Positions 16,244 to 48,521 of a stretch of 64,000 nt of DNA are shown here, in pieces (position 1 is the stretch's first letter; every line of letters begins with the position of its first letter). The DNA lies in contig NW_003314282.1 in NCBI RefSeq assembly GCF_000143415.4, positions 759,872 through 823,871 on the forward strand, read 5' to 3'. The position numbers and the translations under genes were made by a program. This DNA comes from Selaginella moellendorffii. Taxonomy: Eukaryota > Plantae > Lycopodiophyta. A model generated the notes under the pieces. That model was not told the DNA's origin. It saw only the letters and a program-made list of their open reading frames with translations, and made no database searches.

Positions 16244-16826
16244 ATGGCTGTATCAATTGCGTCTTGCTTTCTTCTTTGCTTTTTGTTTGCTCGTGTAGCT
16301 GTGGGTCTTCTTGTACAATATGGCTCCACCACTGTTGAAAATGGCAACTTCATCTCCTTGATCAACACTAACTCAGCTCCCACTGTTGACATTCAAGGAT
16401 TTCGCGGGAATGGCAGTGTTAGCCTGTTTTCGGTGGTGATGGCGGATCAAAAGGCACTCTCAGCCCCAAACAAAACTTATCCTTACATCAACTTTTGGAT
16501 TGCAAACATTCCAGCAGGCACCTCTGGTAAGTTCTCTTTTTTTTATCTTTAATTGATAGATTGGATTTGTGGTTCTGTTTGTAGGAGCTGTAAAGAGTAA
16601 CATTCTTGAGCCTTATGTATCTCCTTCCAACACTGGCAAGAACATCCCATACCCAAATCCATTCAACGCTAAAAACCACACATATGATTTTGTGCTCGTT
16701 CCACAGAGGAATCCCTTGGTGAAGCCCATGAGTAGTCGCATTGTTCTCTCACTGCCCGATATCATCCAACAGTACCACTGTGGGAGTCCCCTCCAGACAG
16801 TCTCCTTCACCACCTCGCTCAACTAA
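16244..16826 (+). CDS. Secreted divergent PEBP-fold protein, copy A (most divergent)
   Basis: Signal peptide MAVSIASCFLLCFLFARVAVG followed by LLVQYG..V.NG, PTVDI.G, SVVMAD, FWIANIPAG, YVSP, NHTYDFVLVPQ, YHCGSPL. Intron at 16527-16584; TATA box at 16194-16202. Confidence 0.8.
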
Positions 16827-17297
16827 ATAATTAAAATTTGCTATTGATTATCAGCTACTTGGCATTAATAAAAGTGGATCTTGTGTCCTACAAGAGAGAT
16901 TTTTTTCTCCTTACACAAGGAAAACGTGGTTTTAAACATTAGCATTTGTGATTGATCTCAAATGCTATTTTTTGTCCTTACACAAGAAAACGGGATGGAC
17001 CATCTTGTCTTCTACAATACATAAAAAAAAAAAGAATGTTAGTGTGCTAAAAAGAAGTGTGTGAGGTCCTGACCACCTTTTTAATTAACGTACGATACAT
17101 GAAAGTTTCCTCTGTACATAAGTCTAACGAAAAGCCTGGCTTTCGGAACGCGATAGTTTTTTGTCGCTTGGCTTCAATAATTTGCACAACCAGTCCTGAA
17201 ACATTCAGTAGCCAAATGAATCAGTGCATATAAAATGGATGCTTACGTTAATTACTCGCGACTACCACCACCATATAGCTTCTTCTCAAACATGGTT

Positions 17298-18773
17298 TCA
17301 TATGGTAAACTGCCCCTTGGACGCCGCGGAAGTAGCAAACAACCAGCTGCTTACTGCCTCGGCACTTGCATTGCCTCGCCCGTGATGGCTGTCTTCGCAA
17401 CTGATCGAGAAACGAGCGTGCTTCGCCTGGGAGCTCGAGCGATGCCCAATGATCATATGCTCCACATTCTCGAGCTCCGATCGGCTGAATCCATACTCCA
17501 TGATGCAGTCGCTCTCGTGAAGATCGGCCGTGGAGTGCGAGTGCTTTGCTCTGTTCGCTTGCTTAGCCTCGGTGAGCTTCCGTGTGGCCTTTGCCAGCCG
17601 CTCGTTCGCCTCCTCGAGCCTCTGCGAGTGGAGCTCGTCGGAAGCTCTGAACTGGTCTTGGAGATCCGTGACTTGCTGGAGCAGCACGTCTCGCTGGTGG
17701 CACACGGAGCGGTAGTCCTGCTGGAGCTGCGCGTACCTCGCGCTGAGCTGATCGAAGTCGAGAGAACGCTCCGGGGTCTCGAGCTGGGCCACCGCTTGCT
17801 GGGCTTGCCACAGGGACGAGATGAGCGCTTCCTTTTGCTGGATCACGGTCTGCTTCATCTGCTTCAAGATCCCGTCCACGGCGCTCAAAACCTGCTTCTG
17901 CTGCATCGAGCAGAAGGTGAGAGCTCCGCCTCTGGAGCCGCCGGACGATTCACCGAAGACAAACTTGGAAGAAGGCAGCGACGACGACGAAGAACAAGGC
18001 CTGATGGCCACCTCTCGAAGCTCGTCACCTTGACGTAGCGTTTCCACGATCAAATCCTCGTCCGGAGTCCCATCCCGCTCGTTGGACCTGTCCTCCCACG
18101 ACAATCTCTTCCTCTTTCCCGACTGCTCGCCGGTGGTGGCGAAGCGCATCGTCGGCTGCAAATCCACCCCTGGAAGATCGAAGTGGTGCTGGAGAACCAT
18201 GCTCAGGTAGTGAGCGGTGGTGACCGGCTTGCCTTCCTTAAGCTCCTTGTGCATCTTGAGCACCACGAACTGTGCCCAGTTGAAGATCTTCTTGGTGGAG
18301 CGAGTGGCACAGGCCGGATAGGCGGTGGCTCCACTCACCCTTTGATTGTTGAGACGAAGCCCAATCCTCTTCACCAAGAACTCGAGGTAGACGCGCATGA
18401 CGTGCTCTTTCACCTCGCACAGCTTCCAGCCACTGGCCTGGCTATGGCCTTTCTCGCTGAAGTACTTCTGGATCTCGGGGCCATGGAGCTGGGAGTTATA
18501 CTCGGTGGGGATCTCTTCCAGATCGGAGCCGTAAGGGAGGCACAGCGCCTCGCCGACGCTCTTGTCGCTCAGCTCCATGCTGCCAAGCTCCGGGACGTGG
18601 ATCGTCTTGGACTCGGAGTCATACCCTTGCGTCGCCTTGCGGACGAGCTCCACATCCATGGCCTTGAGCTTGAGCTTGATGAAATCCACCAGGCCTGTCT
18701 CCTCGATCCACGCCGCCTGGGGCGTGAAGAGATCGTCCCACATTTGGGGCTTGAGGAAGCGCCATGGCTCCAT
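17298..18773 (-). CDS. Intronless plant-mobile-domain/transposon-associated-like protein with a coiled-coil C-terminus (about 490 aa from MEPW)
   Basis: Long GC3-rich ORF. The pattern ELV....YD.....I.V.....L....V.EALCLPYG ... KIFNWAQFV resembles PMD/TE-associated domains, and the tail is a Q/E/L-rich heptad run. The family call is tentative. Confidence 0.6.
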   Translation of the reverse strand: MEPWRFLKPQMWDDLFTPQAAWIEETGLVDFIKLKLKAMDVELVRKATQGYDSESKTIHVPELGSMELSDKSVGEALCLPYGSDLEEIPTEYNSQLHGPEIQKYFSEKGHSQASGWKLCEVKEHVMRVYLEFLVKRIGLRLNNQRVSGATAYPACATRSTKKIFNWAQFVVLKMHKELKEGKPVTTAHYLSMVLQHHFDLPGVDLQPTMRFATTGEQSGKRKRLSWEDRSNERDGTPDEDLIVETLRQGDELREVAIRPCSSSSSLPSSKFVFGESSGGSRGGALTFCSMQQKQVLSAVDGILKQMKQTVIQQKEALISSLWQAQQAVAQLETPERSLDFDQLSARYAQLQQDYRSVCHQRDVLLQQVTDLQDQFRASDELHSQRLEEANERLAKATRKLTEAKQANRAKHSHSTADLHESDCIMEYGFSRSELENVEHMIIGHRSSSQAKHARFSISCEDSHHGRGNASAEAVSSWLFATSAASKGQFTI

Positions 18774-19078
18774 GGCGGGAGGACACCCCGTGGAGTGGAG
18801 AACCCTACCTCCGCATTGTGAAAATGCCGCAGCGGAGCTCCAGATCTCCTTGCCTGGCGCGGCGATTCGCGGATTAGCACCGCATTGGAGGAGATTGGTG
18901 GATGGGCGAGAGCTCGCCTCGCAGCTCCACAAACGTGGGAGGAGAGAGAAGAAGAATTAACCTAAAATTTCTGTTCCCGCGTAACAAGATAAAAAGCATA
19001 TACCTTTACCGTCTGCCCTAAAGTAGTCCACGGACCTTGCCGGTTTAGCAAGACGCCAAAGAGGATCGGTGACCGAGG

Positions 19079-22000
19079 ATGGATTGTCCTCGCACGCCTC
19101 TCCTTGGATCAAGCTCCATTTCCAATGATCATGGTTCGTCTTGGAAAGATTCGCTCTTCTTCTCGTGGCTCAATCCTCTGCTTGCCATCGGCGCCAAGAA
19201 GCCACTCCAGCGATGCGATGTTCCAGCGCTGCGCGACCAGGATGACACCGCCGAGAGAACACACGCGGGATTGATCCAAGCGCTATCCAAGGTAGGAGAC
19301 GATCACACCCCCTCGAGCCTCTTCTGGGCGATCGCGCGATGCCACTGGCGGGAGATCTGGCGCACAGGAGCGCTGGCACTGGTGAAAACCATCGCCATCT
19401 CTTGTAACCCACTGTTCCTCCGCTACTTCACGAGCTTCGTTGCTGCTAGCAATGGTGGCGGTGGCTTGCCGGCGAGAACAAGAGGCTATCTTCTCGTGGC
19501 CGCCCTCTTCTCCGCTAAGATCCTCGAATGTCTGTCACAGCGACACTGGTTCTTTGGCGCTCGCCGCCTGGGCCTTCGCCTTCGATCGTCGATCGTCGCC
19601 GCCATCTACGCCAAGGAGCTCAAGCTCTCGCATCAATCCCGCCAACGCCATGCCAGCGGCGAGATCGTCAGCTACATCTCTGTGGATGCCTATCGCCTGG
19701 GAGAGTTTTTCTGGTGGTCTCACCAGCTCTGGACGGTTCCACTCCAGATCTCCATCGCTCTCGCCATCTTGGTCTCCACTGTTGGCCTGGCAACGCTCTC
19801 GGGGCTGCTCGTCATCCTCATCACCGCCGCCATCCAAGCTCCACTCGCGAAGATCCAGCAGCGAAACCAGTATAACTTGATGGTTGCCCAGGATCAGCGA
19901 TTGCGAGTGAGCAGCTCCATTCTCTCCAGCATGAAGATCATCAAGCTCCAGGCCTGGGAGAGATACTTCCAGCAACTTATCGAAAGCTTTCGTGCTCGAG
20001 AGTATGCGTGGCTCTATGGAGTGAAGCAAATCTGGGCTGCCGGGAGCGTCATGTTTTGGATGTCTCCGGTCGTCACCGCCTCGGTGGTCTTCGCGACTTG
20101 CATCCCTCTCTCGATCAAGCTCGATGCCACGCTCGTGTTCACAGTGCTCGCCACGTTTCGGGTGATTCAAGAGCCCGTGAGAAATCTTCCCGACGTTCTT
20201 ACCGCGATGATCCAAGCTCGGGTGTCGCTCGAGAGGCTCTCCAAGTTCTTCCAGGACGCGGAGCTGCAAGAGGACGCAGTGGAGAGGGATTTTTTCTCGC
20301 GGCAACACGACGTGATCTCTATTGACTCGGCCACCTTCGCCTGGGAAGAAACTGGAAAGTTCTCTTTGGCGGATTTGAGCTTGAAAATCACGAGAGGAGA
20401 GCTCATCGCAGTTTGTGGTGCTGTTGGATCTGGAAAATCTACACTCTTGCATTCGATTCTTGGGGAAGTTCCAAGATTTTCTGGCAAGGTACTTATCTCG
20501 TTTTGCTTTTCGACAAGATAACGCTTGTAAACCATCACTTTGTAGGCCAAAGTTTGTGGAAGCATAGGTTACGTCTCGCAGACCGCTTGGATCCGGAGTG
20601 GTAGCGTTCGAGAGAACATTTTATTCGGGGAGGCCATGGACAAAACTTTCTACGAGCGAGTGATCAAGGCTTGTGCTCTCGAGGAAGATCTCGCAGGCTT
20701 CTCTCACGGGGATTTAACCGAGATTGGTGAGCGAGGACTCAACTTGAGCGGGGGGCAGAAGCAAAGGCTCCAACTCGCGAGAGCTTTGTACGCGAATGCG
20801 GAGATTTATCTTTTGGACGATCCTTTTAGCGCTGTTGATGCTCAAACTGCTGCTACGTTGTTCCAGGCAAGTCTAGTTTCTTTTTAGCCTCTCTTTGATA
20901 TCTTTGACAGGCATGTATACTCCAACAACTGAGGAACAAAACAGTGATATTGGTTACTCACCAAGTGGAGTTTCTTTCATCAGTGGACAAGATCCTGGTA
21001 TGTTTTGCCGTCAACTTCTCTGACAATCGATTATCAATTCTTTTTCTACGATTCAGGTGATGGAGTCTGGACGCATTGTCCAGTCCGGGAGCTACCAAGA
21101 ACTTCTCATCAGCTCCGGGAATATTTTTTCGAGGCTCGTGAACGCTCACGAGGACTCTTTTATCTTCCAAGTTCATCACACCAACAACGAAAGCCATCGC
21201 CACGAAACCTATCAAAGACAGCTCTCGAAGTCGAGCGAGAACAAAACTTCTTACCAACAATTGATCCAGGACGAAGAGATCGCAGCAGGGAACCTGGGAC
21301 TAAAACCATACCTCGACTACATCGACGGAAGTGGTAGTCGATCTTTGCTGGGATTAGTGCTCGTTTTCCAAGCTCTCTTCGTTTTTGGAGTGCTTTCGAG
21401 CAACTATTGGCTGGCCACACAAGTTGCGAATCCCAACACGAGCGTCCAAACTTTGATCGGGGTTTTCACAGCGATCTCCTTCGCCAGCACTGGACTTGTC
21501 TATGCCAGAGCTCGATTCCTTGTTAGCATCGGCTTGCGAGCTTCTCGGGCCTTCTTCTCGGGTCTTATAAACTCGCTCTTTCGTGCACCCATGGCGATGT
21601 TTGATTCAACTCCACTCGGGAGGATTCTCAGCAGAGTACGCTTCCTTTTCTTCCTTTCTTTTTACTCAGTGTTCATTGTTTCCAGGCTTCGTCGGATATG
21701 AGCATTTTGGACGTAGAAGTGCAAAGCTACTTCAATTTTTCCTTATCGGGATTGTCCGAAATGGTCGGAATGGTGGTGATTATCACGCTCGTCACCTGGC
21801 AAATCCTCTTTGTAGCCATTCCAACCTTCGCTATTCTTTGGAGAATCCAGGTTCGTTTTTCCTTCGTTTTCATATGATCACCTCTTTGATCTTACAGAGG
21901 TACTACTTAAAAACTGCTCGTGAACTCGTCCGGATCAACGGGACGACGAAAGCACCGGTTCTAAACCACACTGGAGAAACTGTGAATGGCGCCGTCCCGA

Positions 22001-23392
22001 TTCGAGCGTTTAGAAAACAAAGCATGTTTACGCAAGAAAACATGAAACTCGTCAACTCGGATGCCTCGGTTTCTTTGCACACTTACGCCGGATACGAGTG
22101 GCTTTCCCTTCGAGTGGAGTTTCTTGGAATGATCGTGCTTTTAACTGCGGCTTTGCTCGTGGTGATCTTTCGAGATCAACTCTCCTCCGGTATGATAGAA
22201 AAAGACTTATTTTTTCAAGGTTTCCTTCTGTTTTGTGTATGTTCTTTGTCAGGTTTTGCTGGTCTCTCTCTCACCTATGCGTTTGCTCTAAATGGCTGCC
22301 AAGTTTTCTTGATCCAATCCGTAAGTTACTTATCGGGCTACATTGTTGCTGTGGAGAGAATAAGCCAGTATATGAAGTTGCCAGAGGAAGCTCCTTTGGT
22401 TATCGAATCAAACCGACCACCAGCGGCGTGGCCTGCGCATGGAGAAGTTGAGCTCCAAAATTTACAAGTAAGAAAAGATAAACCCATCATGATCATGCTA
22501 ACGTGTTTTTCCTATAGATTCGATACAGAACCAACAGTCCTTTGGTGCTCAAAGGAATCTCATGTATGTTTCCCGGAGGCAAGAAAGTTGGACTTGTTGG
22601 ACGAACTGGAAGTGGCAAGACGACGTTGATCAGTGCCTTGTTTCGCTTGGTTGAGCCCGACGGTGGTCGGATCCTTATCGATCGCATTGATATCACAACC
22701 ATCGGACTGTTTGATCTGAGAACCCGGATTGGAGTCATTCCTCAAGAAGCTTTCTTGTTTCGAGGAACTGTACGCTCGAACTTGGATCCACTGCAGCAGT
22801 TCTCGGACGAGCAAATCTGGCAAGTAAGTCCGGTTGATCGAGTTTTTTTTTTTTTTCGCTTAGAACTCTCACAATTATCACAGAGCTTGCGAAAGTGTCA
22901 GCTTTTGAAAGCTGTGAAGGAAACCCCAAAGCAGCTTGACTCACTCGGTATGAACACTTCTCCTCCTCTTTTTTTGGTCTCTTACTTGAGTGGTGGGATT
23001 TTCAAGTGAGCGATGATGGCGAGAACTGGAGCGCTGGGCAGAGGCAGCTCTTTTGCCTGGCTCGGGTTTTGCTCAAACGGAGCAAAGTTCTCGTCCTCGA
23101 CGAAGCTACTGCATCGATCGATTCCACCACCGACGCTGTTCTCCAGAAAGTTATAAGGGACGAGTTTAGCGACTGCACAGTGATCACGGTTGCTCATCGA
23201 ATTTCCACTGTTATAGACAGTGATCTCATTCTCGGCCTCAAAAATGGTAAGTCGGGGAAGCAAGCATCTTTTTTCTTATCTTTTTTTGCAGGATACATGG
23301 TTGAGTGTGATTCTCCTCAAGCTCTGCTTGACAACCAAAACTCTCTCTTTGCAAAGCTGGTGGCGGAATACTGGTCAAGTTGTGATAAGTGA
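19079..23392 (+). CDS. ABC transporter subfamily C (MRP-type), lacking the N-terminal TMD0
   Basis: FFSWLNPLL linker, TMD1, Walker [10 protein letters not shown], signature [22 protein letters not shown]2 ([12 protein letters not shown]), [33 protein letters not shown]. Confidence 0.95.
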
Positions 23393-23952: not shown

Positions 23953-24127
23953 GCATTTGTTTTCAGTGGCATTCAAAAGTGTATATAGTTGTATATGTAT
24001 TTATATGCAAGTTTATTACGAAAGTAAACTGCCTAATAAAGTAATAAGACAATTTGATTCACTATAAACTTGCATAATTTATCGTTTTATATAAATCTCA
24101 AGGTCATATTCATCATTTAATTTTCTA

Positions 24128-24610
24128 GTGGCGGATTCAGTGGTGTCTTGCCTCGTTCTCTGCGCCTTTCTGGTTCCAGTTAGCGTGGGTTTGCTTGTAC
24201 AAATATGGCTCCACCACTGTCGGGAATGCCAACTTCATCTCATTGAGCAGCACTGGTTCTGCCCTTGCAGTTGATATTGAAGGATATGGGAAGAATGGCA
24301 CTGTTCGTTTGTTCTCAGTGGTTATGGCTGCTCTATGGATTGCAAGGTAACTTCAACTTATTTGTTTTGGTTTTAAAATTTGATGATGGTGGCTTGGTAC
24401 AGGAGCTGTAAAGGGCAGTATTTTGGAGCCTTCTGTATCTCTTTCCAACACCAGCAAGAACATTTCATACCCAAATCCATTCAATGCAAGGAACCACACT
24501 TGTTTGTGCCACAGAGGAATCCCTTGGTAAAGCCGATAGTCGACTTGTCAACTCACTGGCTGATATCATCCATCAATACCATCTCCAAACCGTCTCCTTC
24601 ACGCATTGAT
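24128..24610 (+). pseudogene. Secreted PEBP-like copy B (pseudogene)
   Basis: ATG changed to GTG, a 1-nt insertion after GTACAA, and several deletions relative to 26755-27335. Confidence 0.85.
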
Positions 24611-26754: not shown

Positions 26755-27335
26755 ATGGCAGCTTCAGTGGTGTCTTCCCTCATTCTATGCTCCTTTCTGG
26801 TGCAAGTTAGTGTGGGTTTGCTTGTACAATATGGCTCCACCACTGTCGGGAATGGCAACTTCATCTCATTGAGCAGCACTGGTTCTGCCCCTACAGTTGA
26901 CATTGAAGGATATGGGAAGAATGGCACTGTTAGTTTGTTCTCGGTGGTTATGGCTGATCAAAAGGCATTGTCAGCACAAAACAAGGTTTACCCCTACATC
27001 AACTTTTGGATTGCAAACATCCCAGCGGGCAGCACAGGTAACTTCAACTTATATGTTTTGGTTTACAAATGTGATAATGGTGGCTTGGTACAGGAGCTGT
27101 AAAGGGCAGCATTTTGGAGCCTTATGTATCTCCTTCCAACACCAGCAAGAACATTCCATATCCAAATCCATTCAATGCAAAGAACCACACGTACGATTTC
27201 GTGCTTGTACCACAGAGGAATCCCTTGGTGAAGCCCATGGATAGTCGACTTGTCAACTCACTGGCTGATATCATCCAGCAATACCACTGTGGAAGCCCTC
27301 TCCAAACCGTCTCCTTCACGACCTCACTTTATTGA
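26755..27335 (+). CDS. Secreted divergent PEBP-fold protein, copy C
   Basis: Two exons, intact: MAASVVSSLILCSFLVQVSVG-LLVQYGSTTVGNG...FTTSLY. Confidence 0.8.
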
Positions 27336-29938: not shown

Positions 29939-30308
29939 ATGGATTCTAAAGCACTACAGCTTCTTATCCTCATCTTGGTTTCAATTGGCCATTTCCCTAA
30001 TTGCGGGACTTCTCAGTGCGATCGAGCTCATCTTCTCAAAGAATGCGTCCCGTGTGTGGCATCTGGCACTGTTCTTGAGCATCCAGATGTAAATTGTTGC
30101 AAAGCAGTGAATGTTCTAGGCCACAATTGCTTGTGTTCACTCATTGTTTCTTCTACTGGTGTTTTTGCAAAAGAAACAATGAAGAGATATGTGGAGTCTT
30201 GTCAAGTAGTGCTCCCAGAGGATTATCAATGTAAGTTCTGATCAAAGTGTTTGTAGTCACTAAAATTTTGCTATGCTATTGTTCTTTGCAGGTGAAGGCA
30301 TCATGTAA
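29939..30308 (+). CDS. nsLTP-like (8CM/prolamin) secreted protein A, copy c, intact
   Basis: Signal peptide plus C-x8-C-x2-C-x13-CC-x9-CLC-x21-C-x9-C. The intron at 30231-30291 splits the last Cys codon, and the protein ends CEGIM*. Confidence 0.85.
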
Positions 30309-30532: not shown

Positions 30533-31114
30533 ATGGCAACTTCAGTGGTGTTTTGCTTCGTTCTCTGCTTCCTTCTGATTCAAGTTAGTGTGGGTTTGCT
30601 TGTACAATATGGCTCCACCACTGTCGGGAATGGCAACCTCGTCTCATTGAGCAGCACTGATTCTGCCCCTACAGTTGACATTGAAGGATTTGGGAAGAAT
30701 GGCACTACTCGTCTCTTCTCGGTGGTCATGGCAGATCAAAAGGCATTGGTAGCGTCAAATAAAGTTTATCCCTACATCAACTTTTGGATTGCAAACATTC
30801 CAGCCGGCAGCACTGGTAAGTAATATATATTTTGGTTTACAAATCTTTACAAATCATGGTGGCTTGGTACAGGAGCTGTGAAGGGCAGCATTTTGGAGCC
30901 TTATGTATCTCCTTCCAACACCAGCAAGAACATTCCATACCCAAATCCATTCAATGCAAGGAACCACACGTATGATTTCGTGCTTGTACCACAGAGGAAT
31001 CCCTTGGTGAAGCCCATGGATAGTCGACTTGTCAACTCACTGGCTGATATTATCCAGCAATACCACTGTGGAAGCCCTCTCCAAACCGTCTCCTTCACGA
31101 CCTCACTCCATTGA
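30533..31114 (+). CDS. Secreted divergent PEBP-fold protein, copy D
   Basis: Two exons, intact; TATAAAT at 30486-30492. Confidence 0.8.
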
Positions 31115-36586: not shown

Positions 36587-37166
36587 ATGGCAACTTCAGT
36601 TGTGTTTTGCTTCGTTTTCTGCTTCTTTCTGATTCAAGTTAGTGTGGGTTTGCTTGTACAATATGGCTCCACCACTGTCGGGAATGGCAACTTCGTCTCA
36701 TTGAGCAGCACCGATTCAGCCCCTACAGTTGACATTGAAGGCTTTGGGAAGAATGGCACTACTCGTCTCTTCTCGGTGGTCATGGCAGATCAAAAGGCAT
36801 TGGTAGCGTCAAATAAAGTTTATCCCTACATCAACTTTTGGATTGCAAACATTCCAGCCGGCAGCACTGGTAAGTAATATATATTTTGGTCTACAAATCT
36901 CTAAAAATCACAGTGGTTTGGCAGGAGCTGTGAAGGGCAGCATTTTGGAGCCTTATGTATCTCCTTCCAACACCAGCAAGAACATTCCATACCCAAATCC
37001 ATTCAATGCAAGGAACCACACGTATGATTTCGTGCTTGTACCACAGAGGAATCCCTTGGTGAAGCCCATGGATAGTCGACTTGTCAACTCACTGGGTGAC
37101 ATCATTCAGCAATACCACTGTGGAAGCCCTCTCCAAACCGTTTCCTTCACGACCTCACTCTATTGA
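36587..37166 (+). CDS. Secreted divergent PEBP-fold protein, copy E
   Basis: Two exons, intact. Confidence 0.8.
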
Positions 37167-37535
37167 TGTTATTTGATATAAGAGGCATAACTCAATGAAA
37201 TGAAAGATTTTTGTTATCAAGATCAAATTAAAAAATGCGATGCGGTGCGGGTGGACAAAGCAAGTGTTGGACAAGGGTAAGTTATTTGAGAGTATCCCCA
37301 ACCCCGAGCTTCCATGTAGCTACCACCAGATTTCTAATTTGCTAGCTCGTAGCGAGCTCATGACAGCACTGCTTTGCTTGAAGTGTTCTTGAAGTGATCG
37401 ATTCACGACGCGTTTAAGTTGATCGTGTAAAGCTGAATCATTGCGGCAGCACGAAGCAAACATCCATCGCTAGCTTTATAAGAAAAAGAATCGAGATTGC
37501 AGCAGTAGTGAGAAAGTGTGATTCTAGCTTCCAAA

Positions 37536-37874
37536 ATGGAAAAAGGCCATCTTTCTTTTGCGAAGTTTATCCCCTTGGTGCTTGTGATGATCTTGTTGAT
37601 CATATCCACGCCAGGAGCACATTCCATGAGGTGTAATCGCGCACAAGTCTTCGATACATGTGCTCCTTGTGTCCAGTTTGGATCCGTGAAGAACAGCCCG
37701 GACGCATCGTGCTGCAAGGCCGTCAAGCTCCTCAGCTTGGATTGCCTGTGTAGCATGCTGGTTGCTACCAAAGGGAAGAATGCTAATCGAGTGATCAAGG
37801 CATACTCCAGTAAGTGTAAAATTCGTCTCCCTGGGCACTTCGATTGTATCCAGAGAAGCCAAGCGCATCCTTGA
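37536..37874 (+). CDS. nsLTP-like secreted protein B (intronless, basic), the only intact copy
   Basis: Signal MEKGHLSFAKFIPLVLVMILLIISTPGAHS followed by CNRAQVFDTCAPC..CC..CLC..C..LPGHFDC. Confidence 0.85.
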   Translation: MEKGHLSFAKFIPLVLVMILLIISTPGAHSMRCNRAQVFDTCAPCVQFGSVKNSPDASCCKAVKLLSLDCLCSMLVATKGKNANRVIKAYSSKCKIRLPGHFDCIQRSQAHP

Positions 37875-38543: not shown

Positions 38544-40913
38544 ATGGCGGAAAGCGATAGCGATGTTGAGCGCTTTGCCTTCCAGGCGGAGATCAACCAG
38601 CTTCTCAGTCTCATCATCAACACCTTCTACAGCAACAAGGAGATCTTCTTGCGGGAGCTCATCAGCAATGCCTCGGATGTGAGTGTTAGATGCTCGTTCG
38701 GCGATATTTTACTGCTATTCTCATCGATCTTTGCCTTCTTTCTGCGATTTCTCACCGATCTTTGCATTCTTTCTGCGATTTCCAGGCTCTCGACAAGATC
38801 CGGTTCGAAGGGCTGACTGACAAGAGCAAGCTCGAGAGCCAGCCGGAGCTTTTCATCCACATCGTTCCGGACAAGGCGAGCAAGACCCTGAGCATCATCG
38901 ATAGCGGCATCGGGATGACAAAGTCCGGTGAGTTTGAGATTCTAGAAATTCCAGATTTCTAGACTGAGGTCTTTTTTCTAGATTTTTGTCTGACTCGAGC
39001 TTGTTTTGTCAGATCTCGTGAACAATCTGGGTACCATCGCCCGGTCTGGCACGAAGGAGTTCATGGAGGCTCTGGCTGCCGGCGCCGATGTGTCGATGAT
39101 CGGTCAGTTTGGTGTTGGGTTCTACTCGGCGTACCTGGTGGCCGAGAAGGTTGTCGTGACGACCAAGCACAACGATGACGAGCAGTACATCTGGGAGTCT
39201 GAGGCCGGTGGTTCTTTCACTGTGACTCGCGATACCACTGGTGAGAGGCTGGGTCGTGGAACCAAGATTGTTCTCTATCTCAAGGAAGACCAGGTATGCG
39301 TTTCTATTTCATCGATGTGAAACAAGTACTTACTTTGATTTTGGTTGGCACAGCTTGAGTACCTTGAAGAGAGGAAGCTCAAGGATCTCATCAAGAAGCA
39401 CTCCGAGTTTATCAGCTATCCCATCTCCGTCTGGATCGAGAAGACTACTGACAAGGAGATCTCGGACGACGAGGAGGAAGAGGAGAAGAAGGATGACGAG
39501 GAGGGGAAGATCGAGGAGGTCGATGAAGAGAAGGAGAAGGAAAAGAAGAAGAAGAAGACGGTGAAGGAGGTGTCTCACGAGTGGAGCCACGTAAACACTC
39601 AGAAGCCCATCTGGATGAGGAAGACCGATGAGATCACCAAGGAGGAGTATGGGGCCTTCTACAAGAGCCTGACCAACGACTGGGAGGACCATCTCGCGGT
39701 GAAGCACTTCGCCGTGGAGGGGCAGCTAGAGTTCCGGGCCATCCTCTTCGTTCCCAAGAGGGCTCCCTTTGATCTCTTCGACACGAGGAAGAAGCTCAAC
39801 AACATCAAGCTCTACGTGCGGCGGGTGTTCATCATGGACAACTGTGAGGAGATCATCCCCGAGTACCTGGCCTTCGTCAAGGGCGTGGTGGACTCGAACG
39901 ACTTGCCGCTCAACATCTCCCGCGAGATGCTCCAGCAGAACAAGATCCTCAAGGTGATCCGGAAGAACCTGGTGAAGAAATGTCTGGAGATGTTCGCCGA
40001 GATCGCAGAGAACAAGGAGGACTACAACAAGTTCTACGAGGCTTTCGCGAAGAACATCAAGCTGGGGATCCATGAGGACAGCCAGAACCGGCAGAAGCTG
40101 GCCGACTTGCTGCGCTACCACTCGACCAAGAGCGGCGACGAGATGACGAGCCTCAAGGACTACGTGACCCGGATGAAGGAGAACCAAAAGGACATCTTCT
40201 ATATCACCGGCGAGAGCAAGAAGGCGGTCGAAAACTCTCCCTTCCTGGAGAGGCTCAAGCGCAAGGGGTACGAGGTTCTCTATATGGTGGACGCGATCGA
40301 CGAGTACGCAGTGGGGCAGCTCAAGGAGTACGATGGTAAGAAGCTCGTCTCGGCCACCAAGGAGGGATTGAAGCTCGAGGACACCGACGACGAGAAGAAG
40401 AAGTTCGAGGAAAAGAAGGCGGCGTTTGAGGGGCTGTGCAAGGTGGTGAAGGACATCCTGGGCGAGAAGGTTGAGAAGGTGGTGGTCTCGGACAGGATTG
40501 TGGATTCGCCGTGCTGCCTGGTTACCGGCGAGTATGGCTGGACCGCCAACATGGAGAGGATCATGAAGGCTCAGGCGCTCCGGGACAGCTCCATGTCGAG
40601 CTACATGAGCTCGAAGAAGACGATGGAGATCAATCCGGACAACTCGATCATGGAGGAGCTGAGGAAGCGGGCGGACGCGGACAAGAATGACAAGGCGGTG
40701 AAGGATCTGGTGCTGCTGCTGTTCGAGACGGCGCTGCTCACGTCGGGATTCAGCCTGGATGATCCCAACACTTTTGGATCCAGGATCCATCGCATGCTCA
40801 AGCTGGGGCTGAGCATCGACGATGATGTGAGTGGCGATGCCGCTGACGTTGAGATGCCGCCGCTCGAGGAAGGGAACGATGCCGAGGGGAGCAAGATGGA
40901 GGAAGTCGACTGA
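38544..40913 (+). CDS. HSP90: Cytosolic heat shock protein 90 (4 exons)
   Basis: [50 protein letters not shown], and C-terminal MEEVD. Confidence 0.99.
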
Positions 40914-41321: not shown

Positions 41322-41903
41322 TCAATAGAGTGATGTCGTAAAGGAGACGGTTTGGAGAGGGCTTCCACAGTGGTATTGCTGGATGATGTCAGCCAGTGAG
41401 TTGACAAGTCGACTATCCATGGGCTTCACCAAGGGATTCCTCTGTAGTACAAGCACGAAATCATAGGTGTGGTTCCTTGCATTGAATGGATTTGGGTATG
41501 GAATGTTCTTGCTGGTGTTGGAAGGAGATACATAAGGCTCCAAAATGCTGCCCTTCACAGCTCCTGTACCAAGCCACCATGATTTGTAAAGATTTGTAAA
41601 CCAAAATATATATTACTTACCAGTGCTGCCGGCTGGAATGTTTGCAATCCAAAAGTTGATGTAGGGATAAACTTTATTTGACGCTACCAATGCCTTTTGA
41701 TCTGCCATGACCACCGAGAAGAGACGAGTAGTGCCATTCTTCCCAAATCCTTCAATGTCAACTGTAGGGGCAGAATCAGTGCTGCTCAATGAGACGAAGT
41801 TGCCATTCCCGACAGTGGTGGAGCCATATTGTACAAGCAAACCCACACTAACTTGAATCAGAAAGAAGCAGAGAACGAAGCAAAACACCACTGAAGTTGC
41901 CAT
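41322..41903 (-). CDS. Secreted divergent PEBP-fold protein, copy F
   Basis: Two exons, intact; P changed to L in VLVLQ. Confidence 0.8.
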
Positions 41904-42506: not shown

Positions 42507-44466
42507 TAGAAGCAACTCTACAGGTAGCAGCAAGCGAGCCTATTACAAGTAAAAACATGTGAGTTGGTTTGACAAAACGAGCTACATTGTGATCAAAGTA
42601 ACGGACTTTTATCGCATATGAAGATTTTAAAAATACAAGAGAAATATTTTACTAGGACCAGTAAGAAACAAGAACCTTGTCACTCTCTCTTAGCTTGTTG
42701 CAACTTGCTTAGTCGAACAACTGTACATTGCCTGCCCAAACCCAACTTTTGCCTATAGTCTTTCGCCTATTATAGCAAACATGGCCGAAGTGCAAAGGAA
42801 AATTCCCGATCGAAGTCTCTTTCCCCGTGATGATAGCTCAGCAGATAGATGGATATTCACGCGCTTTAAAGAGATGCCACAACTGAGCCTTAGTCAGACA
42901 AGAGCCCGGACGGTTTCTAAATCATGATCATCGGTTGCGCATCGCCACCCTTCTTATTTCTTTTCTATCCACTTGCCTGAGCCTGTCTCCAAAAGTACAC
43001 GCATTTGTTGCCAAGTTCTCCTTTCTTATAGTTCCATCATGGAGCAAGAAAGGTATACATACGCCCTTGGGATCACATATGTATATGTCTATATGCCTTG
43101 ACGAGAAAATTGGTAGAGTTATATAGCTGATTCATACTTGGACCTCTTGAACTGTTGGATCGATTTTTGGAGCACGAAACACAGTATAGCAAACGTAATG
43201 TGGGATCCTCGAGGCCTCTGCTTGTATTTGAGGTGCCGATCAGACATTAATGGTGTTTAAGCACTATCTCATTTTCGCCATCAAGCATTCCAATGGCGAG
43301 CGCAAAATGGTTGGGTGCTGTGGAGGTAGAAGAAGATATGGTCTCTTTGGTGATAAACAATCCCTAGAGGAAGCCTTCGGAAAAAAAAAACGCGCGCTGA
43401 AGCCTCATGTCAGATGTGTGCAAAACAAAATCAATATCATAGCTGCTTGACGATTTTATGGCTTTGACAAAGTCGTACCTAGAGTGAGATTCTATATCCA
43501 TCAAGTCAATCAATACCCAAAGGAAGGAACATCCTTAGATCTGGGAAGATGTCAGCAAATCTTTCAATACTTGGGGAGTAGAGGATGGGAGGAGCCAATT
43601 CCACAATCGGCTCTTCCGCGAATATGGATGCCGTGTTCACTGTGCAGCCATCCAGCGCAGCTCCACCTCGAAAAGGAGGAGGTGATCGTGCACTATCTAC
43701 ACCCTACACAAAATAAGATTAAACATGGCGAACTCTTAGCTCACTGAGCGGCTGCGGCATTGGAGGTTTTGAGCTGGCGAGATCCAGAGCTCCTCTGGAT
43801 CGTTTCGAGTGTGCTCGCAATCTCTTTGAAAGCCTTCCAACCGTCCAAGTTTTCCATCGGTGAATCGTCTGGCTCCAGAGGATCAAAGTTTCAAAGGAAC
43901 TGCACGAAGAAAGCCGGAAGAATCCCTGGGATCCAACAACGCGTGCTAGGAAGCAGACCGTGATCCAGCCAAAGGAAGCGCTCATCTCGTCCCTGTAGTT
44001 CTTTGATTTTTCTGGAACAAGTTCTAGAGTTTTGTTCTTTGATCTTTGGCAAGCTCAGCAGCTCGACGCTCCGGAGAGCTCGCTCGACTTTGAGCAGCTC
44101 AGCGCGAAGTACACGTAGCTCCAGCAGGATCACCACTCCGTGTGCCACCAGCGAGACGTGCTGCTCCAGCAATTCCCGGATCTTCAAGATCAAGGTGAAA
44201 GGCCATATCCATTTGTTCACAGAAGGGGTAGAGTTCCAATTCATGTCGGTTCCAATTCGTGTTTAATGGTCGAGAGAGCTCGTCTTGTAGTGTATTTAGT
44301 CTTGAGCATCCGTAGACTGGAATGGAGGGCGTTCCGAGAGTCGACCTCGCAGAAAATACGTTCTTACAACGTATCTGTACATTTAGTAAATTGCGTGTGT
44401 CGGTAGGCTACAGTCCCCTGTATGCCAAAGCTGCAAAAGGTGCTGCCATGCAACACGAGGCAAAGA

Positions 44467-44503
44467 CGCCACTCGGGGGATTCGAACCCCCAACCCAAAG
44501 GTT
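44467..44503 (-). pseudogene. tRNA 3'-half, second copy (third at 49683-49718)
   Basis: Reverse complement aacctttgggttgggggttcgaatcccccgagtggcg, with a perfect GGGGG/CCCCC T-stem. Confidence 0.55.
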
Positions 44504-45008
44504 CTAGTTGTATGGCTCTAGGCAAATCTTCTAGAATAATGAGCTCCATTTCTCACATATTTTTTCGAAACCAGATATTAGCACGATTCTTATACTACCT
44601 TGGAAACTGCAACAGAGCCTCCTCGTCATGATACTTCAAGAGCATCCTGAACGTGAAGCCGATGTTATGCTTTATGCTGACAAGCACCCAATGTCCCTGT
44701 TCTTCCTAGACAAGCGTACATCAAAGGCATCACACATGTATCTCTTCGACAAGAGACGTTTATGGAATGCACTCCTGGCGTGGATGTGATCAACAGAGCA
44801 GCACCATGGGGATAAATTTCGGCAGCGATCCAAAGGTGGAATCTAAGAGCGGTAGACTGACATAGAAATCTGGTGGTAGCTACATGGCTTGTTGTCTAAC
44901 ACTTGTCTACCCGCACAAGCAAAGATCGCATCGATTCTTTGATTGGTCTTAATAAAAAAATCTTTCATTTCATTGAGTCGTGCCTTTTATATCAATATCA
45001 AAATAACA

Positions 45009-46209: not shown

Positions 46210-46580
46210 TAGAGGCAACTCCACAGGTAGCAGCAAGGAAGCCTATAACAAGTACAAACATGTGAGATTGTTTGACAAAACGAGCTACATTGTAATCAAA
46301 GTAATGGACTTTTATCGCATATGAAGATTTTTAAAATACAAGCGAAATATTTTACTCGGACCAGTAGGAAATAAGAACCTTTGTCACTCTCTCTTAGGTT
46401 GTTGCAACTTGCTTAGTCAAACAACTGTACATTGCATGCCCAAACCCAACTTTTGCCCATAGTCTTTCGCCAATTATAGCGAAAATGGCCGAAGTGCGAA
46501 GGAAAATTGACGATCGAAGTCTCTTCCCTCGTGACCATAGCTCAGCAGATAGATAGATATTCAAGTCTTCTCTGGTCTCC

Positions 46581-46845
46581 AGCTGGGGCGATGCCGCCGA
46601 CGTTGAGATGACGCCGCTCGAGGAAGGGAACGATGCCGAGGGGAGCAAGATGGAGGAAGTCGACAAACTAATTTTTTTTTTCCATTCCACCCACTAAGAA
46701 CGATTTTTGCTAAGAGAAAGTTTCCGTTTAAAAGTTAGTGGATTGTTAAGTAGGGTTCTTGCTTCTACATATATTTCCCGCTAGAAAGGAAATTTTGGGC
46801 GCGGAGTGGATTCTAGTGTCAATCCAGGAAAGAGAATGTGGCCGC
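46581..46845 (+). pseudogene. HSP90: Duplicated HSP90 3' end and 3' flank
   Basis: [26 protein letters not shown] plus downstream sequence matching 40830-41160. Confidence 0.9.
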
Positions 46846-47939
46846 TGTAGAATCAATTGGATCGACCGATAACAGTGAGGTGGAGGAGGCGCCGCGAGCT
46901 CCAGTGAGTGCAGTGGTGGGACTGGACCAGCTCAAGACAACTATGGTTTCATAAGGTTGAGTTTTTTCTTTCTTTGTTCGATGATCGTGCATTTCGGATC
47001 ATTCGTCCCGGTTGCTGAGCGCTCTTTCGCTCGGGCATTGGTCGCCGAGATCCCTGAGCTCGCCCAGTGGATTTGACATCGAGGCTGGGAGTAGTCATGC
47101 TGATAGACTTTACGAAATTGTATGAACAAGTCAAGGTCAAGGTGATGCTTCTACTTCGATCTGGAACTAAGCTCTTATTCTCTGTGCTTTCTTCTTCTCA
47201 GGTCTGGTACGGAGCTGGACGTCGTAGACAAGACGAGAGCAAGTATGAAGGCCTTGGAGACCGAGATAACTGTGGCGGTCCAAAGCTTCGCCAGCCTCGA
47301 CAGAAGATCACGGACCAAGAAATGCTTCCGCAACTTTTGGAAAGGTACTTGCGTTTTTCGTCACGGCAACTCACATCACATTGTTGTTTGGATTCGATCA
47401 CAGGCTTGCCGTCATTTGGAAGAACTACTTGTCTTGCCAGTCGAAAGTCTTACCTCCCAACTTCTTCTTCTTCCTCTTCTTCTTTGGCCAGTTTGTCCTG
47501 GCAGCGTGAGGAGAGCATCCTGAACGCTTTATGCTGACAAGCGCCCAATGTCCCTATTCTTCCTAGACAAAGCTTGTAAGAGTACATCAAAGGCATCACA
47601 TGTATTCTTCGACAAGAAGAGACGTTTATGGAATGCACTCTTGGCGTGGGATTTGATCAACAAAGCCCATGGGGCTAAAACTTCTACTTAACAACGTCCA
47701 GCTCCAGCAAGTCCCGGATATTCAAGACCAGTTCAGAGCTTCCGATGAGATCCACTCGCAGATTGCACAATTACAACACATAGAATGGACTCTTGGCGTG
47801 GACGTGATCAACAGGATCATCACAAGCAGCACCATGAGGATAAACTTCGCAAAAGAAAGATGGCCTTTTTCCATAAATGGAAATTCTAGTACGTTCAATT
47901 CATTGAGTCATGCCTCTTATATCAATAAAAACAATAATA

Positions 47940-48521
47940 TCAATGGAGTGAGGTCGTGAAGGAGACGGTTTGGAGAGGGCTTCCACAGTGGTATTGCTGA
48001 ACGATATCAGCTAGCGAGTTGACAAGTCGACTATCCATGGGCTTCACCAAGGGATTCCTCTGTGGTACAAGCACGAAATCATAGGTGTGGTTCCTTGCAT
48101 TGAATGGATTTGGATATGGAATGTTCTTGCTGGTGTTGGAAGGAGATACATAAGGCTCCAAAATGCTGCCCTTCACAGCTCCTGTACCAAGCCACCATGA
48201 CTTGTAAAGATTTGTAAACCAAAATAAATATTACTTACCAGTGCTGCCGGCTGGAATGTTTGCAATCCAAAAGTTGATGTAGGGATAAACTTTATTTGAC
48301 GCTACCAATGCCTTTTGATCTGCCATGACCACCGAGAAGAGACGAGTAGTGCCATTCTTCCCAAATCCTTCAATGTCAACTGTAGGGGCTGAACCAGTGC
48401 TGCTCAATGAGACGAAGTTGCCATTCCCGACTGTGGTGGAGCCATATTGTACAAGCAAACCCACACTAACTTGAACCAGAAAGGAGCAGAGAACGAAGCA
48501 AAACACGACTGAAGTTGCCAT
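47940..48521 (-). CDS. Secreted divergent PEBP-fold protein, copy H
   Basis: Two exons, intact. Confidence 0.8.

What the first reader, a model, noticed from the sequence alone, without database searches (positions are those of the whole stretch)
16244..48521. Amplified family of SECRETED, pocket-remodelled PEBP (florigen-fold) proteins
Seen: 8 copies of a two-exon gene, 7 intact. Each encodes a 21-aa hydrophobic leader and a ~153-aa domain collinear with FT/TFL1/MFT (L.V.YG...V.NG, P.V.I.G, VVM.D, W...IPA..G, Y..P, H...F.L..Q, Y..G.P). The family hallmarks differ: DPDxP becomes DQKAL, the LHW His is lost (INFW), GxHR becomes xNHT, and about 12 residues (SKNIPYPNPFNA) are inserted before the His. 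Several N-glycosylation sequons are present (NGS/NGT, NHT, NKT or NTS). Known: characterised plant PEBPs are intracellular developmental regulators with three introns, while secreted PEBPs are known from animals (e.g. PEBP4, nematode Ov-16). Inference: this is an apoplastic plant PEBP clade with a rebuilt ligand pocket, possibly for lipid binding, protease inhibition or defence. The single phase-1 intron in a Gly codon just after IPA lies close to the third FT/MFT intron, hinting at origin from the plant family.
Basis: partly seen in the sequence, partly recalled or inferred. Interest (0 to 1): 0.88.

Follow-up and report, generated by a model that had tools for sequence, protein, structure and literature searches.

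The report
Amplified secreted-type PEBP genes in Selaginella
The spikemoss Selaginella moellendorffii carries seven intact tandem copies of a very diverged relative of the florigen (PEBP) protein family that has an export-type leader and a rebuilt ligand pocket; plant PEBP surveys do not describe this branch, and its expression and function are unproven.

Summary
The window is 100% identical to S. moellendorffii scaffold GL377586.1. It carries seven intact 174-codon, two-exon genes and one pseudogene.

- **Fold:** Pfam's PEBP model (PF01161) does not detect them. Sequence searches link them to Hd3a/FT/TFL1 and, more strongly, to Pfam-positive Selaginella paralogues. An AlphaFold model of a window-encoded mature protein superposes on FT, Hd3a and TFL1 (Z 16-17, about 140 residues, 2.3-2.5 A).
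- **Motifs:** The pocket Asp, the Tyr85 equivalent, one His and a Tyr survive. A 10-residue insertion lies before that His.
- **Export signs:** a variable hydrophobic leader and two sequons conserved across the clade fit entry into the secretory pathway. This is not shown experimentally.
- **Selection:** dN/dS is 0.05-0.4.
- **Expression:** a sister-haplotype copy reads about 0 TPM in 49 atlas samples. RNA-seq gave only depth 2-4, with no spliced read.
- **Range:** relatives were found only in lycophytes.
- **Prior record:** UniProt already labels the closest proteins "PEBP-like". A published survey reports only MFT-like PEBPs in lycophytes.

This scan had already noted the same family on other DNA of this genome. 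Verdict: a real new variant of a known fold, function unknown.

The parts
16244..16826 (+). c1, intact PEBP-like gene (exons 16244-16526 and 16585-16826, 58-nt intron). It is the oldest copy (dS about 0.7 to the others) and has no LTP-A gene upstream.
24136..24603 (+). c2, pseudogene: no ATG, 3' part of exon 1 deleted, frameshifts and a deletion in exon 2
26755..27335 (+). c3, intact gene (exons 26755-27037 and 27094-27335, 56-nt intron with donor GTAACT). No RNA reads were laid on it.
30533..31114 (+). c4, intact gene (exons 30533-30815 and 30873-31114, 57-nt intron). RNA depth is low on both strands and no splice joint was reported.
36587..37166 (+). c5, intact gene (exons 36587-36869 and 36925-37166, 55-nt intron)
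41322..41903 (-). c6, intact gene (exons 41903-41621 and 41563-41322, 57-nt intron)
   Evidence: annotated as a 174-aa gene in L006
45009..45588 (-). c7, intact gene (exons 45588-45306 and 45250-45009, 55-nt intron)
47940..48521 (-). c8, intact gene (exons 48521-48239 and 48181-47940, 57-nt intron). Its mature part equals P0024:103-257, the sequence that was folded.
29939..30308 (+). LTP-A, a small Cys-rich nsLTP-like gene co-duplicated upstream of c4 (exons 29939-30230 and 30292-30308). It is strongly transcribed in one RNA run, and 11 reads confirm its 61-nt intron.
48813..49103 (-). LTP-A copy upstream of c8. Further copies lie at 46209-45919 (-), 42506-42222 (-) and 36032-36286 (+, 5' part disrupted), plus two frameshifted copies at 26226-26490 and 23605-23867.
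37518..37874 (+). LTP-B, the only intact copy of a second LTP-family gene (PF00234, 24.3 bits against a cut-off of 21.7). Short 5' remnants follow c3, c4 and c8.
38544..40913 (+). Cytosolic HSP90 gene at the centre of the array. Copies c3-c5 on the + strand lie to its left and c6-c8 on the - strand to its right.

Best explanation
These genes form a Selaginella-specific branch of the PEBP superfamily, here called clade A.

Shown: each gene encodes a 174-residue precursor made of a hydrophobic leader of about 21 residues and a PEBP-fold domain of about 153 residues. The domain starts directly at the first core strand, which corresponds to FT residue 26. The family has been under purifying selection. 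It was amplified in steps as a unit of about 1.5-2 kb, together with an nsLTP-like gene, on both sides of an HSP90 gene.

Inferred: the leader is a cleavable ER signal peptide, cut after ..VSVG before LLVQYG. The protein would then enter the secretory pathway, be N-glycosylated at the two conserved sequons, and act outside the cytosol. In that location it cannot work as a florigen-type 14-3-3/FD co-regulator.

Most likely, and only weakly supported: it is an extracellular or endomembrane-lumen binding protein. Its pocket keeps the Asp, the Tyr85 equivalent, one His and a Tyr. It has lost the second His, the cis-Pro DPDxP loop and the Arg. It has gained a 10-residue flexible loop at the pocket mouth. 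This would change ligand specificity, to a lipid head group, another anion or a protein partner.

Expression appears restricted to a tissue or condition not sampled in the data available here.
For: **Identity of the DNA.** The window is 100% identical over 21,164 bp to S. moellendorffii GL377586.1.

**Homology.**
- phmmer of the paralogue P0001 against PDB sequences finds Hd3a at 4.5e-5, FT at 3.6e-4 and TFL1 at 2.6e-3.
- A profile built only from the Pfam-negative clades A and B finds Hd3a at 9.7e-5.
- An exhaustive phmmer over 1.84 billion representatives links P0001 to the Selaginella proteins P0005, P0006 and P0007 at 1.8e-11 to 6.5e-9. P0005 and P0007 pass Pfam PF01161 (33.3 and 26.3 bits against a cut-off of 24); P0006 was not scanned.

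**Fold.**
- AlphaFold model of P0001: pLDDT 79.7. Foldseek top hits are FT, TFL1 and Hd3a at E about 1e-10 to 1e-9, TM 0.67-0.74.
- Model of the window's own c8 mature protein: pLDDT 84.5, pTM 0.85. It gives Z 16.2-16.8, 138-140 aligned residues and 2.3-2.5 A to FT, Hd3a and TFL1. All rows down to Z 7.9 are PEBPs, and unrelated folds start at Z 6.1.
- The ESM Atlas's own model of P0001 matches a 'Terminal flower 1' cluster at TM 0.71. Its nearest clusters by language-model features are secreted arthropod PEBPs and PEBP4.

**Leader and sequons.**
- The best 12-residue hydropathy window scores 2.6-3.5.
- 14 of 21 leader positions vary among the copies, against 29 of 153 mature positions.
- The residue before LLVQYG is always Gly, and position -3 is V, A or T.
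- Sequons at N56 (NGS or NGT) and N125 (NHT; NNS in clade B) are kept in every clade A member. Clade C, the Diphasiastrum proteins and the canonical sequences have none.

**Selection.** dN/dS is 0.05-0.40 over all 21 pairs. Fisher tests on five of those pairs give p from 1.6e-13 to 0.009.

**Intron.** Clades A and B (44% identical) share its position and phase, and the intronless clade C is collinear across that point.
Against: - Pfam PF01161 does not detect the window proteins at all.
- No signal-peptide predictor was available. The leader has no basic n-region and an h-region of about 16-17 residues, so it could instead be a signal anchor.
- The mature protein has a single Cys, which is unusual for a secreted protein.
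- Expression evidence is poor. The sister-haplotype model Smo416612 is 0 TPM in 48 of 49 stored atlas columns (aerial tissue, roots, rhizophores), and its neighbour Smo416613 is 0 in all.
- In three 2026 RNA-seq runs only one gave reads on c4. These had depth 2-4 in sense and up to 9 in antisense, no splice joint was reported, and c3 had none.
- One contig of uncertain library type crosses the intron unspliced.
- No cluster member of this clade comes from a Logan transcript assembly.
- No ligand or partner is known.
Confidence: 0.68

Rival explanations
1. The hydrophobic N-terminus is an uncleaved signal anchor, or the protein is retained in the ER, Golgi or vacuole. It would then be a membrane-tethered or lumenal PEBP-fold protein rather than an apoplastic one.
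For: The leader has no charged n-region, and its apolar run of 16 residues or more is long for a signal peptide. In the full-length model it forms a low-confidence helix directly abutting the first strand.
Against: The -3/-1 positions (V, A or T, then G) fit a signal-peptidase site in every copy. The leader evolves much faster than the domain, as cleaved leaders do. No KDEL/HDEL motif or vacuolar motif is visible at the C-terminus (..FTTSLH/Y).
Confidence: 0.17
2. The array is a recent amplification, perhaps carried along by a mobile element, of genes that are now silent and on their way to decay. On this view it has no present function.
For: - Expression is about 0 TPM in the stored atlas columns, and RNA-seq depth is very low.
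- One PEBP copy and several LTP-A copies are already broken.
- Fragments related to a 544-aa coiled-coil ORF accompany the repeat units.
- The JGI gene models for these copies are inconsistent, for example the fusions P0024, P0026 and P0003.
Against: - Seven of eight copies keep exactly 174 codons and intact splice sites.
- dN/dS is significantly below 1 even among the youngest copies (c5 against c7: 0.05, p 4e-6).
- c1 diverged at dS about 0.7 and is still constrained (dN/dS 0.15-0.2).
- Single-copy paralogues at other loci (P0001, P0002, P0012, P0014) keep the same architecture.
Confidence: 0.12
3. The proteins act as protease inhibitors in the manner of yeast Tfs1 (the carboxypeptidase Y inhibitor) or of mammalian PEBP1 against serine proteases. 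They would serve as an apoplastic defence against pathogen proteases.
For: The CPY inhibitor in complex with its proteinase (1wpx_B) is among the best structural matches, at Z 15.5. The genes are tandemly amplified and sit beside members of the 'protease inhibitor/seed storage/LTP' family.
Against: The mature protein begins at the first core strand, aligned to FT residue 26. It therefore lacks the N-terminal segment which, from my recollection of the 1WPX paper and not checked here, is Tfs1's inhibitory reactive site. The structural match reflects the shared fold and not a mechanism.
Confidence: 0.08
4. The family came from an animal or nematode secreted PEBP by horizontal transfer. RefSeq names such as '26 kDa secreted antigen-like' and 'protein D2' suggest this.
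For: RefSeq gives these names to clade C proteins. Clade C protein P0005 scores better against rat and mouse PEBP1 (2e-11) than against TFL1 (7e-6). The nearest clusters by ESM features are animal secreted PEBPs.
Against: - The window clade's only significant PDB sequence hits are plant FT, Hd3a and TFL1. Its best structural matches are the same proteins.
- Its best canonical hit in the whole library is a plant MFT-like sequence, P0011.
- The genes have short spliceosomal introns, at a position shared with a Diphasiastrum PEBP.
- Relatives occur in two lycophyte orders.
- Automatic names reflect which hits happen to carry names, not phylogeny.
Confidence: 0.03

Closest known systems
Plant eukaryotic-type PEBPs (MFT, FT, TFL1/CEN; structures 1WKP, 1WKO, 3AXY, 6IGG-6IGJ)
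   Same: They share the fold (Z 16-17, about 140 residues aligned, 24-28% identity). They are collinear over the whole domain. The first Asp of DPDxP, the Tyr85 equivalent, the His and Tyr of GxHRY, the NIP/IP motif and the Y..P motif are kept. One phase-1 intron in a Gly codon lies near the place of FT intron 3 (the FT position is from memory).
   Different: The window proteins have a hydrophobic leader in place of the first roughly 25 residues. DPDxP, the HW histidine and the Arg of GxHR are lost, and a 10-residue loop is inserted before the pocket His. They have one intron instead of three, with no 62-bp or 41-bp exons (PMC6514984, PMC7151754). They carry conserved N-glycosylation sequons. 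They are not detected by PF01161.
Selaginella clade C ('protein D2', '26 kDa secreted antigen-like', 'FT-like' in RefSeq: P0005, P0006, P0007) and clade B (P0015)
   Same: All are lycophyte-only PEBP-like proteins, and most carry a hydrophobic N-terminus. Together with the window clade they form one group in my small tree (99/96; clades A+B 100/98). Clade B shares the intron and the N125-equivalent sequon.
   Different: Clade C is intronless and still passes PF01161. It keeps the HW-position His (IHYW/VHYW), lacks the 10-residue insertion, has no sequons, and has a C-terminal Cys. Clade B has also lost the pocket Asp and His.
Diphasiastrum complanatum PEBP with a hydrophobic leader (P0010, P0022)
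   Same: It is a lycophyte PEBP with an N-terminal hydrophobic leader and a phase-1 intron after the NIPG loop.
   Different: It keeps HW and GIHRY, scores 52 bits on PF01161, and has a second intron. In my small tree it groups with the canonical sequences and not with the Selaginella clades.
Secreted animal PEBPs (vertebrate PEBP4; nematode TES-26, Ov-16 and Tm16, structure 5TVD)
   Same: The architecture is a signal peptide followed by a PEBP domain. These are the nearest clusters by ESM features. TES-26 is a PEBP released in Toxocara excretory-secretory products (PMC4150453).
   Different: There is no evidence of orthology, and the structural match is lower than to plant PEBPs (Tm16 Z 13.8 against FT 16.8). 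As far as I know the animal proteins keep the canonical pocket motifs; I did not test this here.
Yeast Tfs1 (carboxypeptidase Y inhibitor, 1WPX)
   Same: PEBP fold, Z 15.5.
   Different: The window proteins lack an N-terminal segment ahead of the first core strand. Tfs1 is cytosolic.

Membership tests
PEBP superfamily (Pfam PF01161 PBP; PEBP-like fold) | Match to the PF01161 profile above the gathering score (24 bits) | tested here: not met
   There was no hit for the exon translations (E <= 1), for P0001 (E <= 10) or for the exact c8 mature protein P0024:103-257 (E <= 1). The relatives P0005, P0007 and P0010 pass at 33.3, 26.3 and 52.0 bits.
PEBP superfamily (Pfam PF01161 PBP; PEBP-like fold) | Significant sequence similarity to bona fide PEBPs | tested here: met
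   Hd3a 4.5e-5, FT 3.6e-4 and TFL1 2.6e-3 against PDB sequences. A clade A+B profile finds Hd3a at 9.7e-5. P0001 reaches P0005, P0006 and P0007 of clade C at 1.8e-11 to 6.5e-9 in a library of 1.84 billion; P0005 and P0007 pass PF01161.
PEBP superfamily (Pfam PF01161 PBP; PEBP-like fold) | PEBP three-dimensional fold | tested here: met
   The c8 mature model (pLDDT 84.5, pTM 0.85) gives Z 16.2-16.8, rmsd 2.3-2.5 A and 138-140 residues to FT, Hd3a and TFL1. Only PEBPs appear down to Z 7.9. Foldseek gives E 3e-10. The independent ESM Atlas model gives TM 0.71 to a TFL1 cluster. All of these are predicted models, not experimental structures.
PEBP superfamily (Pfam PF01161 PBP; PEBP-like fold) | Signature motifs DPDxP and GxHR, plus the HW histidine of the anion pocket | tested here: not met
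   The motifs read MADQKAL, YINFW and xNHTY. Only the first Asp, the Tyr85 equivalent, and the His and Tyr of GxHRY remain.
Plant EuPEBP (MFT/FT/TFL1) | Four exons and three introns, with exon 2 of 62 bp and exon 3 of 41 bp (PMC6514984, PMC7151754) | tested here: not met
   The genes have two exons of 283 and 242 nt and one intron of 55-58 nt.
Plant EuPEBP (MFT/FT/TFL1) | Third intron in phase 1 in the Gly codon after the IPxxxG loop | tested here: inconclusive
   The window intron is in phase 1 in a Gly codon 6 codons after the Ile of NIP. In Diphasiastrum P0010 the intron is in phase 1, 9 codons after that Ile. The FT position (phase 1, 9 codons after, in Gly102) rests on my memory of a 201-nt exon 1. 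No canonical plant PEBP gene was available to check it.
Plant EuPEBP (MFT/FT/TFL1) | Cytosolic or nuclear protein without a signal peptide, acting through 14-3-3 and FD | tested here: not met
   A hydrophobic 21-residue leader replaces the N-terminal segment. The 14-3-3 contact residues were not analysed.
Plant EuPEBP (MFT/FT/TFL1) | Phylogenetic placement inside the streptophyte MFT-like clade | not testable with these tools
The small tree cannot place the root. Similarity rankings conflict.
Secreted PEBPs (PEBP4, nematode TES-26/Ov-16 type) | Cleavable N-terminal signal peptide followed by a PEBP domain | tested here: inconclusive
   Hydropathy, the -3/-1 rule, the fast-evolving leader and the conserved sequons all fit. 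The nearest clusters by ESM features are secreted PEBPs. No dedicated predictor or experiment was available.
Tfs1-type PEBP protease inhibitors | N-terminal inhibitory segment ahead of the core fold | tested here: not met
   The mature protein aligns from FT residue 26 or Hd3a residue 28 onward. Nothing precedes the first strand once the leader is removed.

The most novel reading that the evidence does not exclude
Lycophytes evolved a genuinely extracellular, N-glycosylated PEBP lineage, which would be the first in plants. Export came first: Diphasiastrum and clade C carry a leader and still pass the Pfam PEBP model (Diphasiastrum keeps HW and GIHRY, clade C the HW-position His). The anion pocket was then progressively rebuilt in clades B and A. 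The window array would be its most derived and most amplified form, working in the apoplast as a ligand or lipid carrier. It might act together with the co-amplified nsLTP-like neighbour, in a specialised organ or in response to challenge.
Probability: 0.3. Interest if true: 0.7.

Novelty: new variant of a known kind. Interest (0 to 1): 0.5.

Why it matters
Plant PEBPs are known almost entirely as intracellular developmental switches: florigen, anti-florigen and MFT. The broadest survey I found states that lycophytes have only MFT-like members, and it admits that divergent ones could have been missed (PMC8408984).

A lycophyte-only set of leader-bearing PEBP-fold proteins would show that this fold was recruited to the secretory pathway in plants as well as in animals. 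The window family is its most diverged and most amplified branch.

The graded series offers a natural experiment on which pocket residues are dispensable. The series runs from the canonical pocket, through Diphasiastrum and clade C, to clades B and A.

The family also shows a limit of Pfam-based surveys, because PF01161 misses clades A and B entirely.

The value is limited by the lack of expression evidence and of any functional clue, and by the narrow taxonomic range.

Tried and rejected
- **Pfam.** Scans of the exon translations, of P0001 and of the c8 mature protein gave nothing relevant.
- **Homologue search with the exon-1 region.** It found only one homologue because the word index is lossy.
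- **Homologue search with a profile of the divergent clades.** It added only S. moellendorffii models and one unrelated canonical PEBP.
- **Homologue search with Diphasiastrum P0010.** This was meant to harvest canonical PEBPs for a tree, but it returned only P0010 itself and used the last search. The tree therefore has only two canonical sequences and no animal, fungal or bacterial ones. I do not claim an origin from MFT.
- **RNA evidence.** The one read-laying run showed a strongly expressed LTP-A gene with a confirmed intron, but only depth 2-4 on the PEBP gene and no splice joint.
- **Expression atlas.** The stored supplement of the atlas preprint is truncated to 49 columns and part of the genes. 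Only Smo416612 to Smo416615 could be read. The window's own models (Smo413648, Smo413642) and the other family members are not in the stored part.
- **Fused LTP+PEBP model (P0024).** I rejected it as a real product. RNA reads splice LTP-A to a short second exon ending ..CEGIM-stop, well before the PEBP ATG.
- **Mobile-element identity.** A Pfam scan of the 544-aa ORF beside c1 and of its fragments gave nothing.
- **P0011's N-terminal hydrophobic extension.** I did not take it as evidence of a secreted canonical PEBP. A normal MFT-like start (MANEY..) follows it, so the extension may be an over-extended ORF call on a transcript contig.

Full report
**What is there**

ORF listing and a blastn of one copy against the window show eight copies of the same two-exon unit between 16244 and 48521. 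I built the gene models by requiring GT..AG introns and the best match to a reference copy.

Seven copies encode exactly 174 residues. Each has one phase-1 intron of 55-58 nt that splits a Gly codon after IPAGxxG. The coordinates are listed under parts. The eighth copy, at about 24136-24603, has no start codon, has lost the 3' part of exon 1, and carries frameshifts and a deletion in exon 2.

The window is 100% identical over 21,164 bp to Selaginella moellendorffii GCA_000143415.2 scaffold GL377586.1. A second scaffold, GL377596.1, carries the same arrangement at about 94% identity and is presumably the other haplotype.

**Are they PEBPs?**

Pfam does not detect them. Neither the exons, nor the paralogue P0001, nor the exact mature c8 sequence (P0024:103-257) matches PF01161. 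Three other lines of evidence establish homology and fold.

1. *Sequence against solved structures.* phmmer of P0001 (72% identical to exon 1 of the window copy used as query) against PDB sequences finds only plant PEBPs: Hd3a 4.5e-5, FT 3.6e-4, TFL1 2.6e-3. A profile made only from the Pfam-negative clades still finds Hd3a at 9.7e-5.
2. *Exhaustive sequence search.* A phmmer over 1.84 billion representatives gives just ten proteins at E <= 1e-3. Among them are the Selaginella proteins P0005, P0006 and P0007 at 1.8e-11 to 6.5e-9. P0005 and P0007 pass PF01161's gathering score, as does a Diphasiastrum protein; P0006 was not scanned.
3. *Structure.* An AlphaFold model of the window's own c8 mature protein has pLDDT 84.5 and pTM 0.85. 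It superposes on FT, Hd3a and TFL1 at Z 16.2-16.8 over 138-140 residues at 2.3-2.5 A. Every row down to Z 7.9 is a PEBP, and unrelated folds begin at Z 6.1. A model of P0001 gave the same answer by Foldseek. So did the ESM Atlas's own model of P0001 (TM 0.71 to a 'Terminal flower 1' cluster).

**The motifs**

- MVDPDxP is MADQKAL; the first Asp is kept.
- YLHW is YINFW; the Tyr85 equivalent is kept and His becomes Asn.
- GIHRY is xNHTY; His and Tyr are kept and Arg becomes Thr.
- The insertion before that His is 10 residues. It is the least confident part of both models.

The pocket is therefore rebuilt rather than erased.

The lycophyte relatives form a graded series.

- Diphasiastrum P0010 keeps HW and GIHRY.
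- Selaginella clade C keeps the HW-position His and a His in the GxHRY region.
- Clade B has also lost the Asp and that His.

In a small tree, clades A+B (100/98) pair with clade C, apart from the Diphasiastrum and canonical sequences (99/96).

**Signs of export**

No signal-peptide predictor was available, so this part is inference.

- The leader is strongly hydrophobic.
- It varies at 14 of 21 positions among the copies, against 29 of 153 in the domain.
- It always ends with V, A or T at position -3 and Gly at -1 before LLVQYG.
- The structural alignment starts at FT residue 26, so the leader replaces the normal N-terminal segment.
- Sequons at N56 and N125 are kept in all eleven clade A sequences. 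The third residue switches between Ser and Thr at N56. Both the middle and third residues change in clade B (NNS against NHT) while the sequon survives.
- Clade C, the Diphasiastrum proteins and the canonical sequences have no sequons.

Points against are the lack of a basic n-region, a rather long apolar stretch, and a single Cys in the mature protein.

**Selection and amplification**

dN/dS is 0.05-0.40 for all 21 pairs of copies. It is significantly below 1 in the five pairs tested, from the oldest (c1 against c4, p 1.6e-13) to young ones (c5 against c7, p 4e-6). dS values suggest a stepwise history: c1 at about 0.7, c3 at about 0.15-0.2 and c4-c8 at 0.03-0.1.

The repeat unit is about 1.5-2 kb. 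It holds an upstream Cys-rich gene, LTP-A, plus the PEBP-like gene. LTP-A is 34% identical (E 4e-22) to a neighbouring gene, LTP-B, which passes PF00234. Several LTP-A copies are broken, and only one LTP-B is intact. The array is arranged in mirror image around an HSP90 gene.

**Gene structure in relatives**

Clades A and B share the phase-1 intron. Clade C is intronless. Diphasiastrum P0010 has a phase-1 intron three codons further on and a second, phase-0 intron.

Plant PEBP genes have four exons, with invariant 62-bp and 41-bp middle exons (PMC6514984, PMC7151754). By my recollection of a 201-nt first exon, FT's third intron is in phase 1 in Gly102. That matches the Diphasiastrum position exactly, and the window position after a three-residue deletion. 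I could not check this on a canonical gene.

**Expression**

- In one of three 2026 RNA-seq runs LTP-A is strongly covered (depth 166 with 12% of the run read). Eleven reads confirm its 61-nt intron.
- In that same run the PEBP gene c4 has depth 2-4 in sense and up to 9 in antisense, with no splice joint reported. Copy c3 has none.
- The spliced LTP-A ends ..CEGIM-stop, so the fused database model P0024 is an annotation artefact.
- In the stored part of the S. moellendorffii expression atlas (bioRxiv 10.1101/744326), the sister-haplotype model Smo416612 is 0 TPM in 48 of 49 aerial, root and rhizophore samples. The next model is 0 in all.
- Strobili, stems, shoot tips and stress samples were not in the stored columns.

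**What is known**

UniProt already names the closest proteins 'PEBP-like protein'. RefSeq names clade C members 'protein D2', '26 kDa secreted antigen-like' or 'FT-like'.

I found no paper describing a leader-bearing or motif-less plant PEBP clade. Bennett and Dixon 2021 report only MFT-like PEBPs in lycophytes and note that divergent members may have been missed.

Earlier notes of this scan describe the same family on other DNA of this genome, with similar conclusions.

**Origin**

This is unresolved. The window clade and Diphasiastrum P0010 score best against plant PEBPs. Clade C scores best against mammalian PEBP1. I could not assemble a broad tree. The introns, the lycophyte-only range and the graded series make vertical descent within plants much more likely than transfer from animals.

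**Verdict**

This is a real, constrained, lineage-specific and very diverged PEBP-fold family with the hallmarks of a secretory protein. It has been amplified with an LTP-like neighbour. Its function, location and expression remain to be shown.

Noticed in passing
window 29939-30308 (+); copies at 49103-48813, 46209-45919 and 42506-42222 (-), and 36032-36286, 26226-26490 and 23605-23867 (+): A small Cys-rich nsLTP-like gene (LTP-A) is co-duplicated upstream of every PEBP copy except c1. In RNA run X9 it reaches depth 166, against about 5 in X10 and X11, and 11 reads confirm its 61-nt intron. Three of its copies are frameshifted or truncated while their PEBP partners stay intact.
   Followed up: partly
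window 37518-37874 (+); remnants at 27387-27662, 31155-31269 and 47874-47770: A second LTP-family gene (LTP-B, PF00234 above threshold, nine Cys) is intact only next to HSP90. Only its 5' end survives downstream of c3, c4 and c8, so the ancestral repeat unit may have been LTP-A > PEBP > LTP-B.
   Followed up: partly
window 26.7-37.2 kb (+ copies), 38544-40913 (HSP90), 41.3-48.5 kb (- copies): The array is a mirror-image arrangement around a cytosolic HSP90 gene that ends in MEEVD. The arms are about 92% identical (29533-31137 against 42924-41300).
   Followed up: no
window 17298-18932 (-) and related fragments at 27558-28529, 31184-32137, 43356-44785 and 49268-49962: A 544-aa ORF with a coiled-coil-like C-terminal part and no Pfam match lies beside c1. 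Degenerate fragments of it accompany most repeat units. It may be part of a mobile element that travelled with, or seeded, the amplification.
   Followed up: partly
window 28336-28382: All three RNA runs place reads on this 46-nt stretch, with consistent unlike sequence on both sides. This suggests an expressed paralogue elsewhere in the genome sharing only this segment.
   Followed up: no
window 19079-23392 (+): A multi-exon ABCC/MRP-type ABC transporter gene lies between c1 and the pseudogene c2.
   Followed up: no
database models P0024, P0026 and P0003 (S. moellendorffii EFJ entries): The JGI gene models for several array members are mis-joined: LTP-A fused to the PEBP gene without its leader, or the PEBP gene run on into downstream repeat sequence. 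UniRef names derived from them ('Bifunctional inhibitor...', 'Ubiquitin-like protease...') are misleading for the PEBP part.
   Followed up: yes
mature proteins of c1-c8, Cys160 (..QYHCGSP..): Every clade A and clade B protein has exactly one Cys outside the leader, at the same position. Clade C proteins have instead an internal Cys and a C-terminal Cys. An intermolecular disulfide is possible but untested.
   Followed up: no
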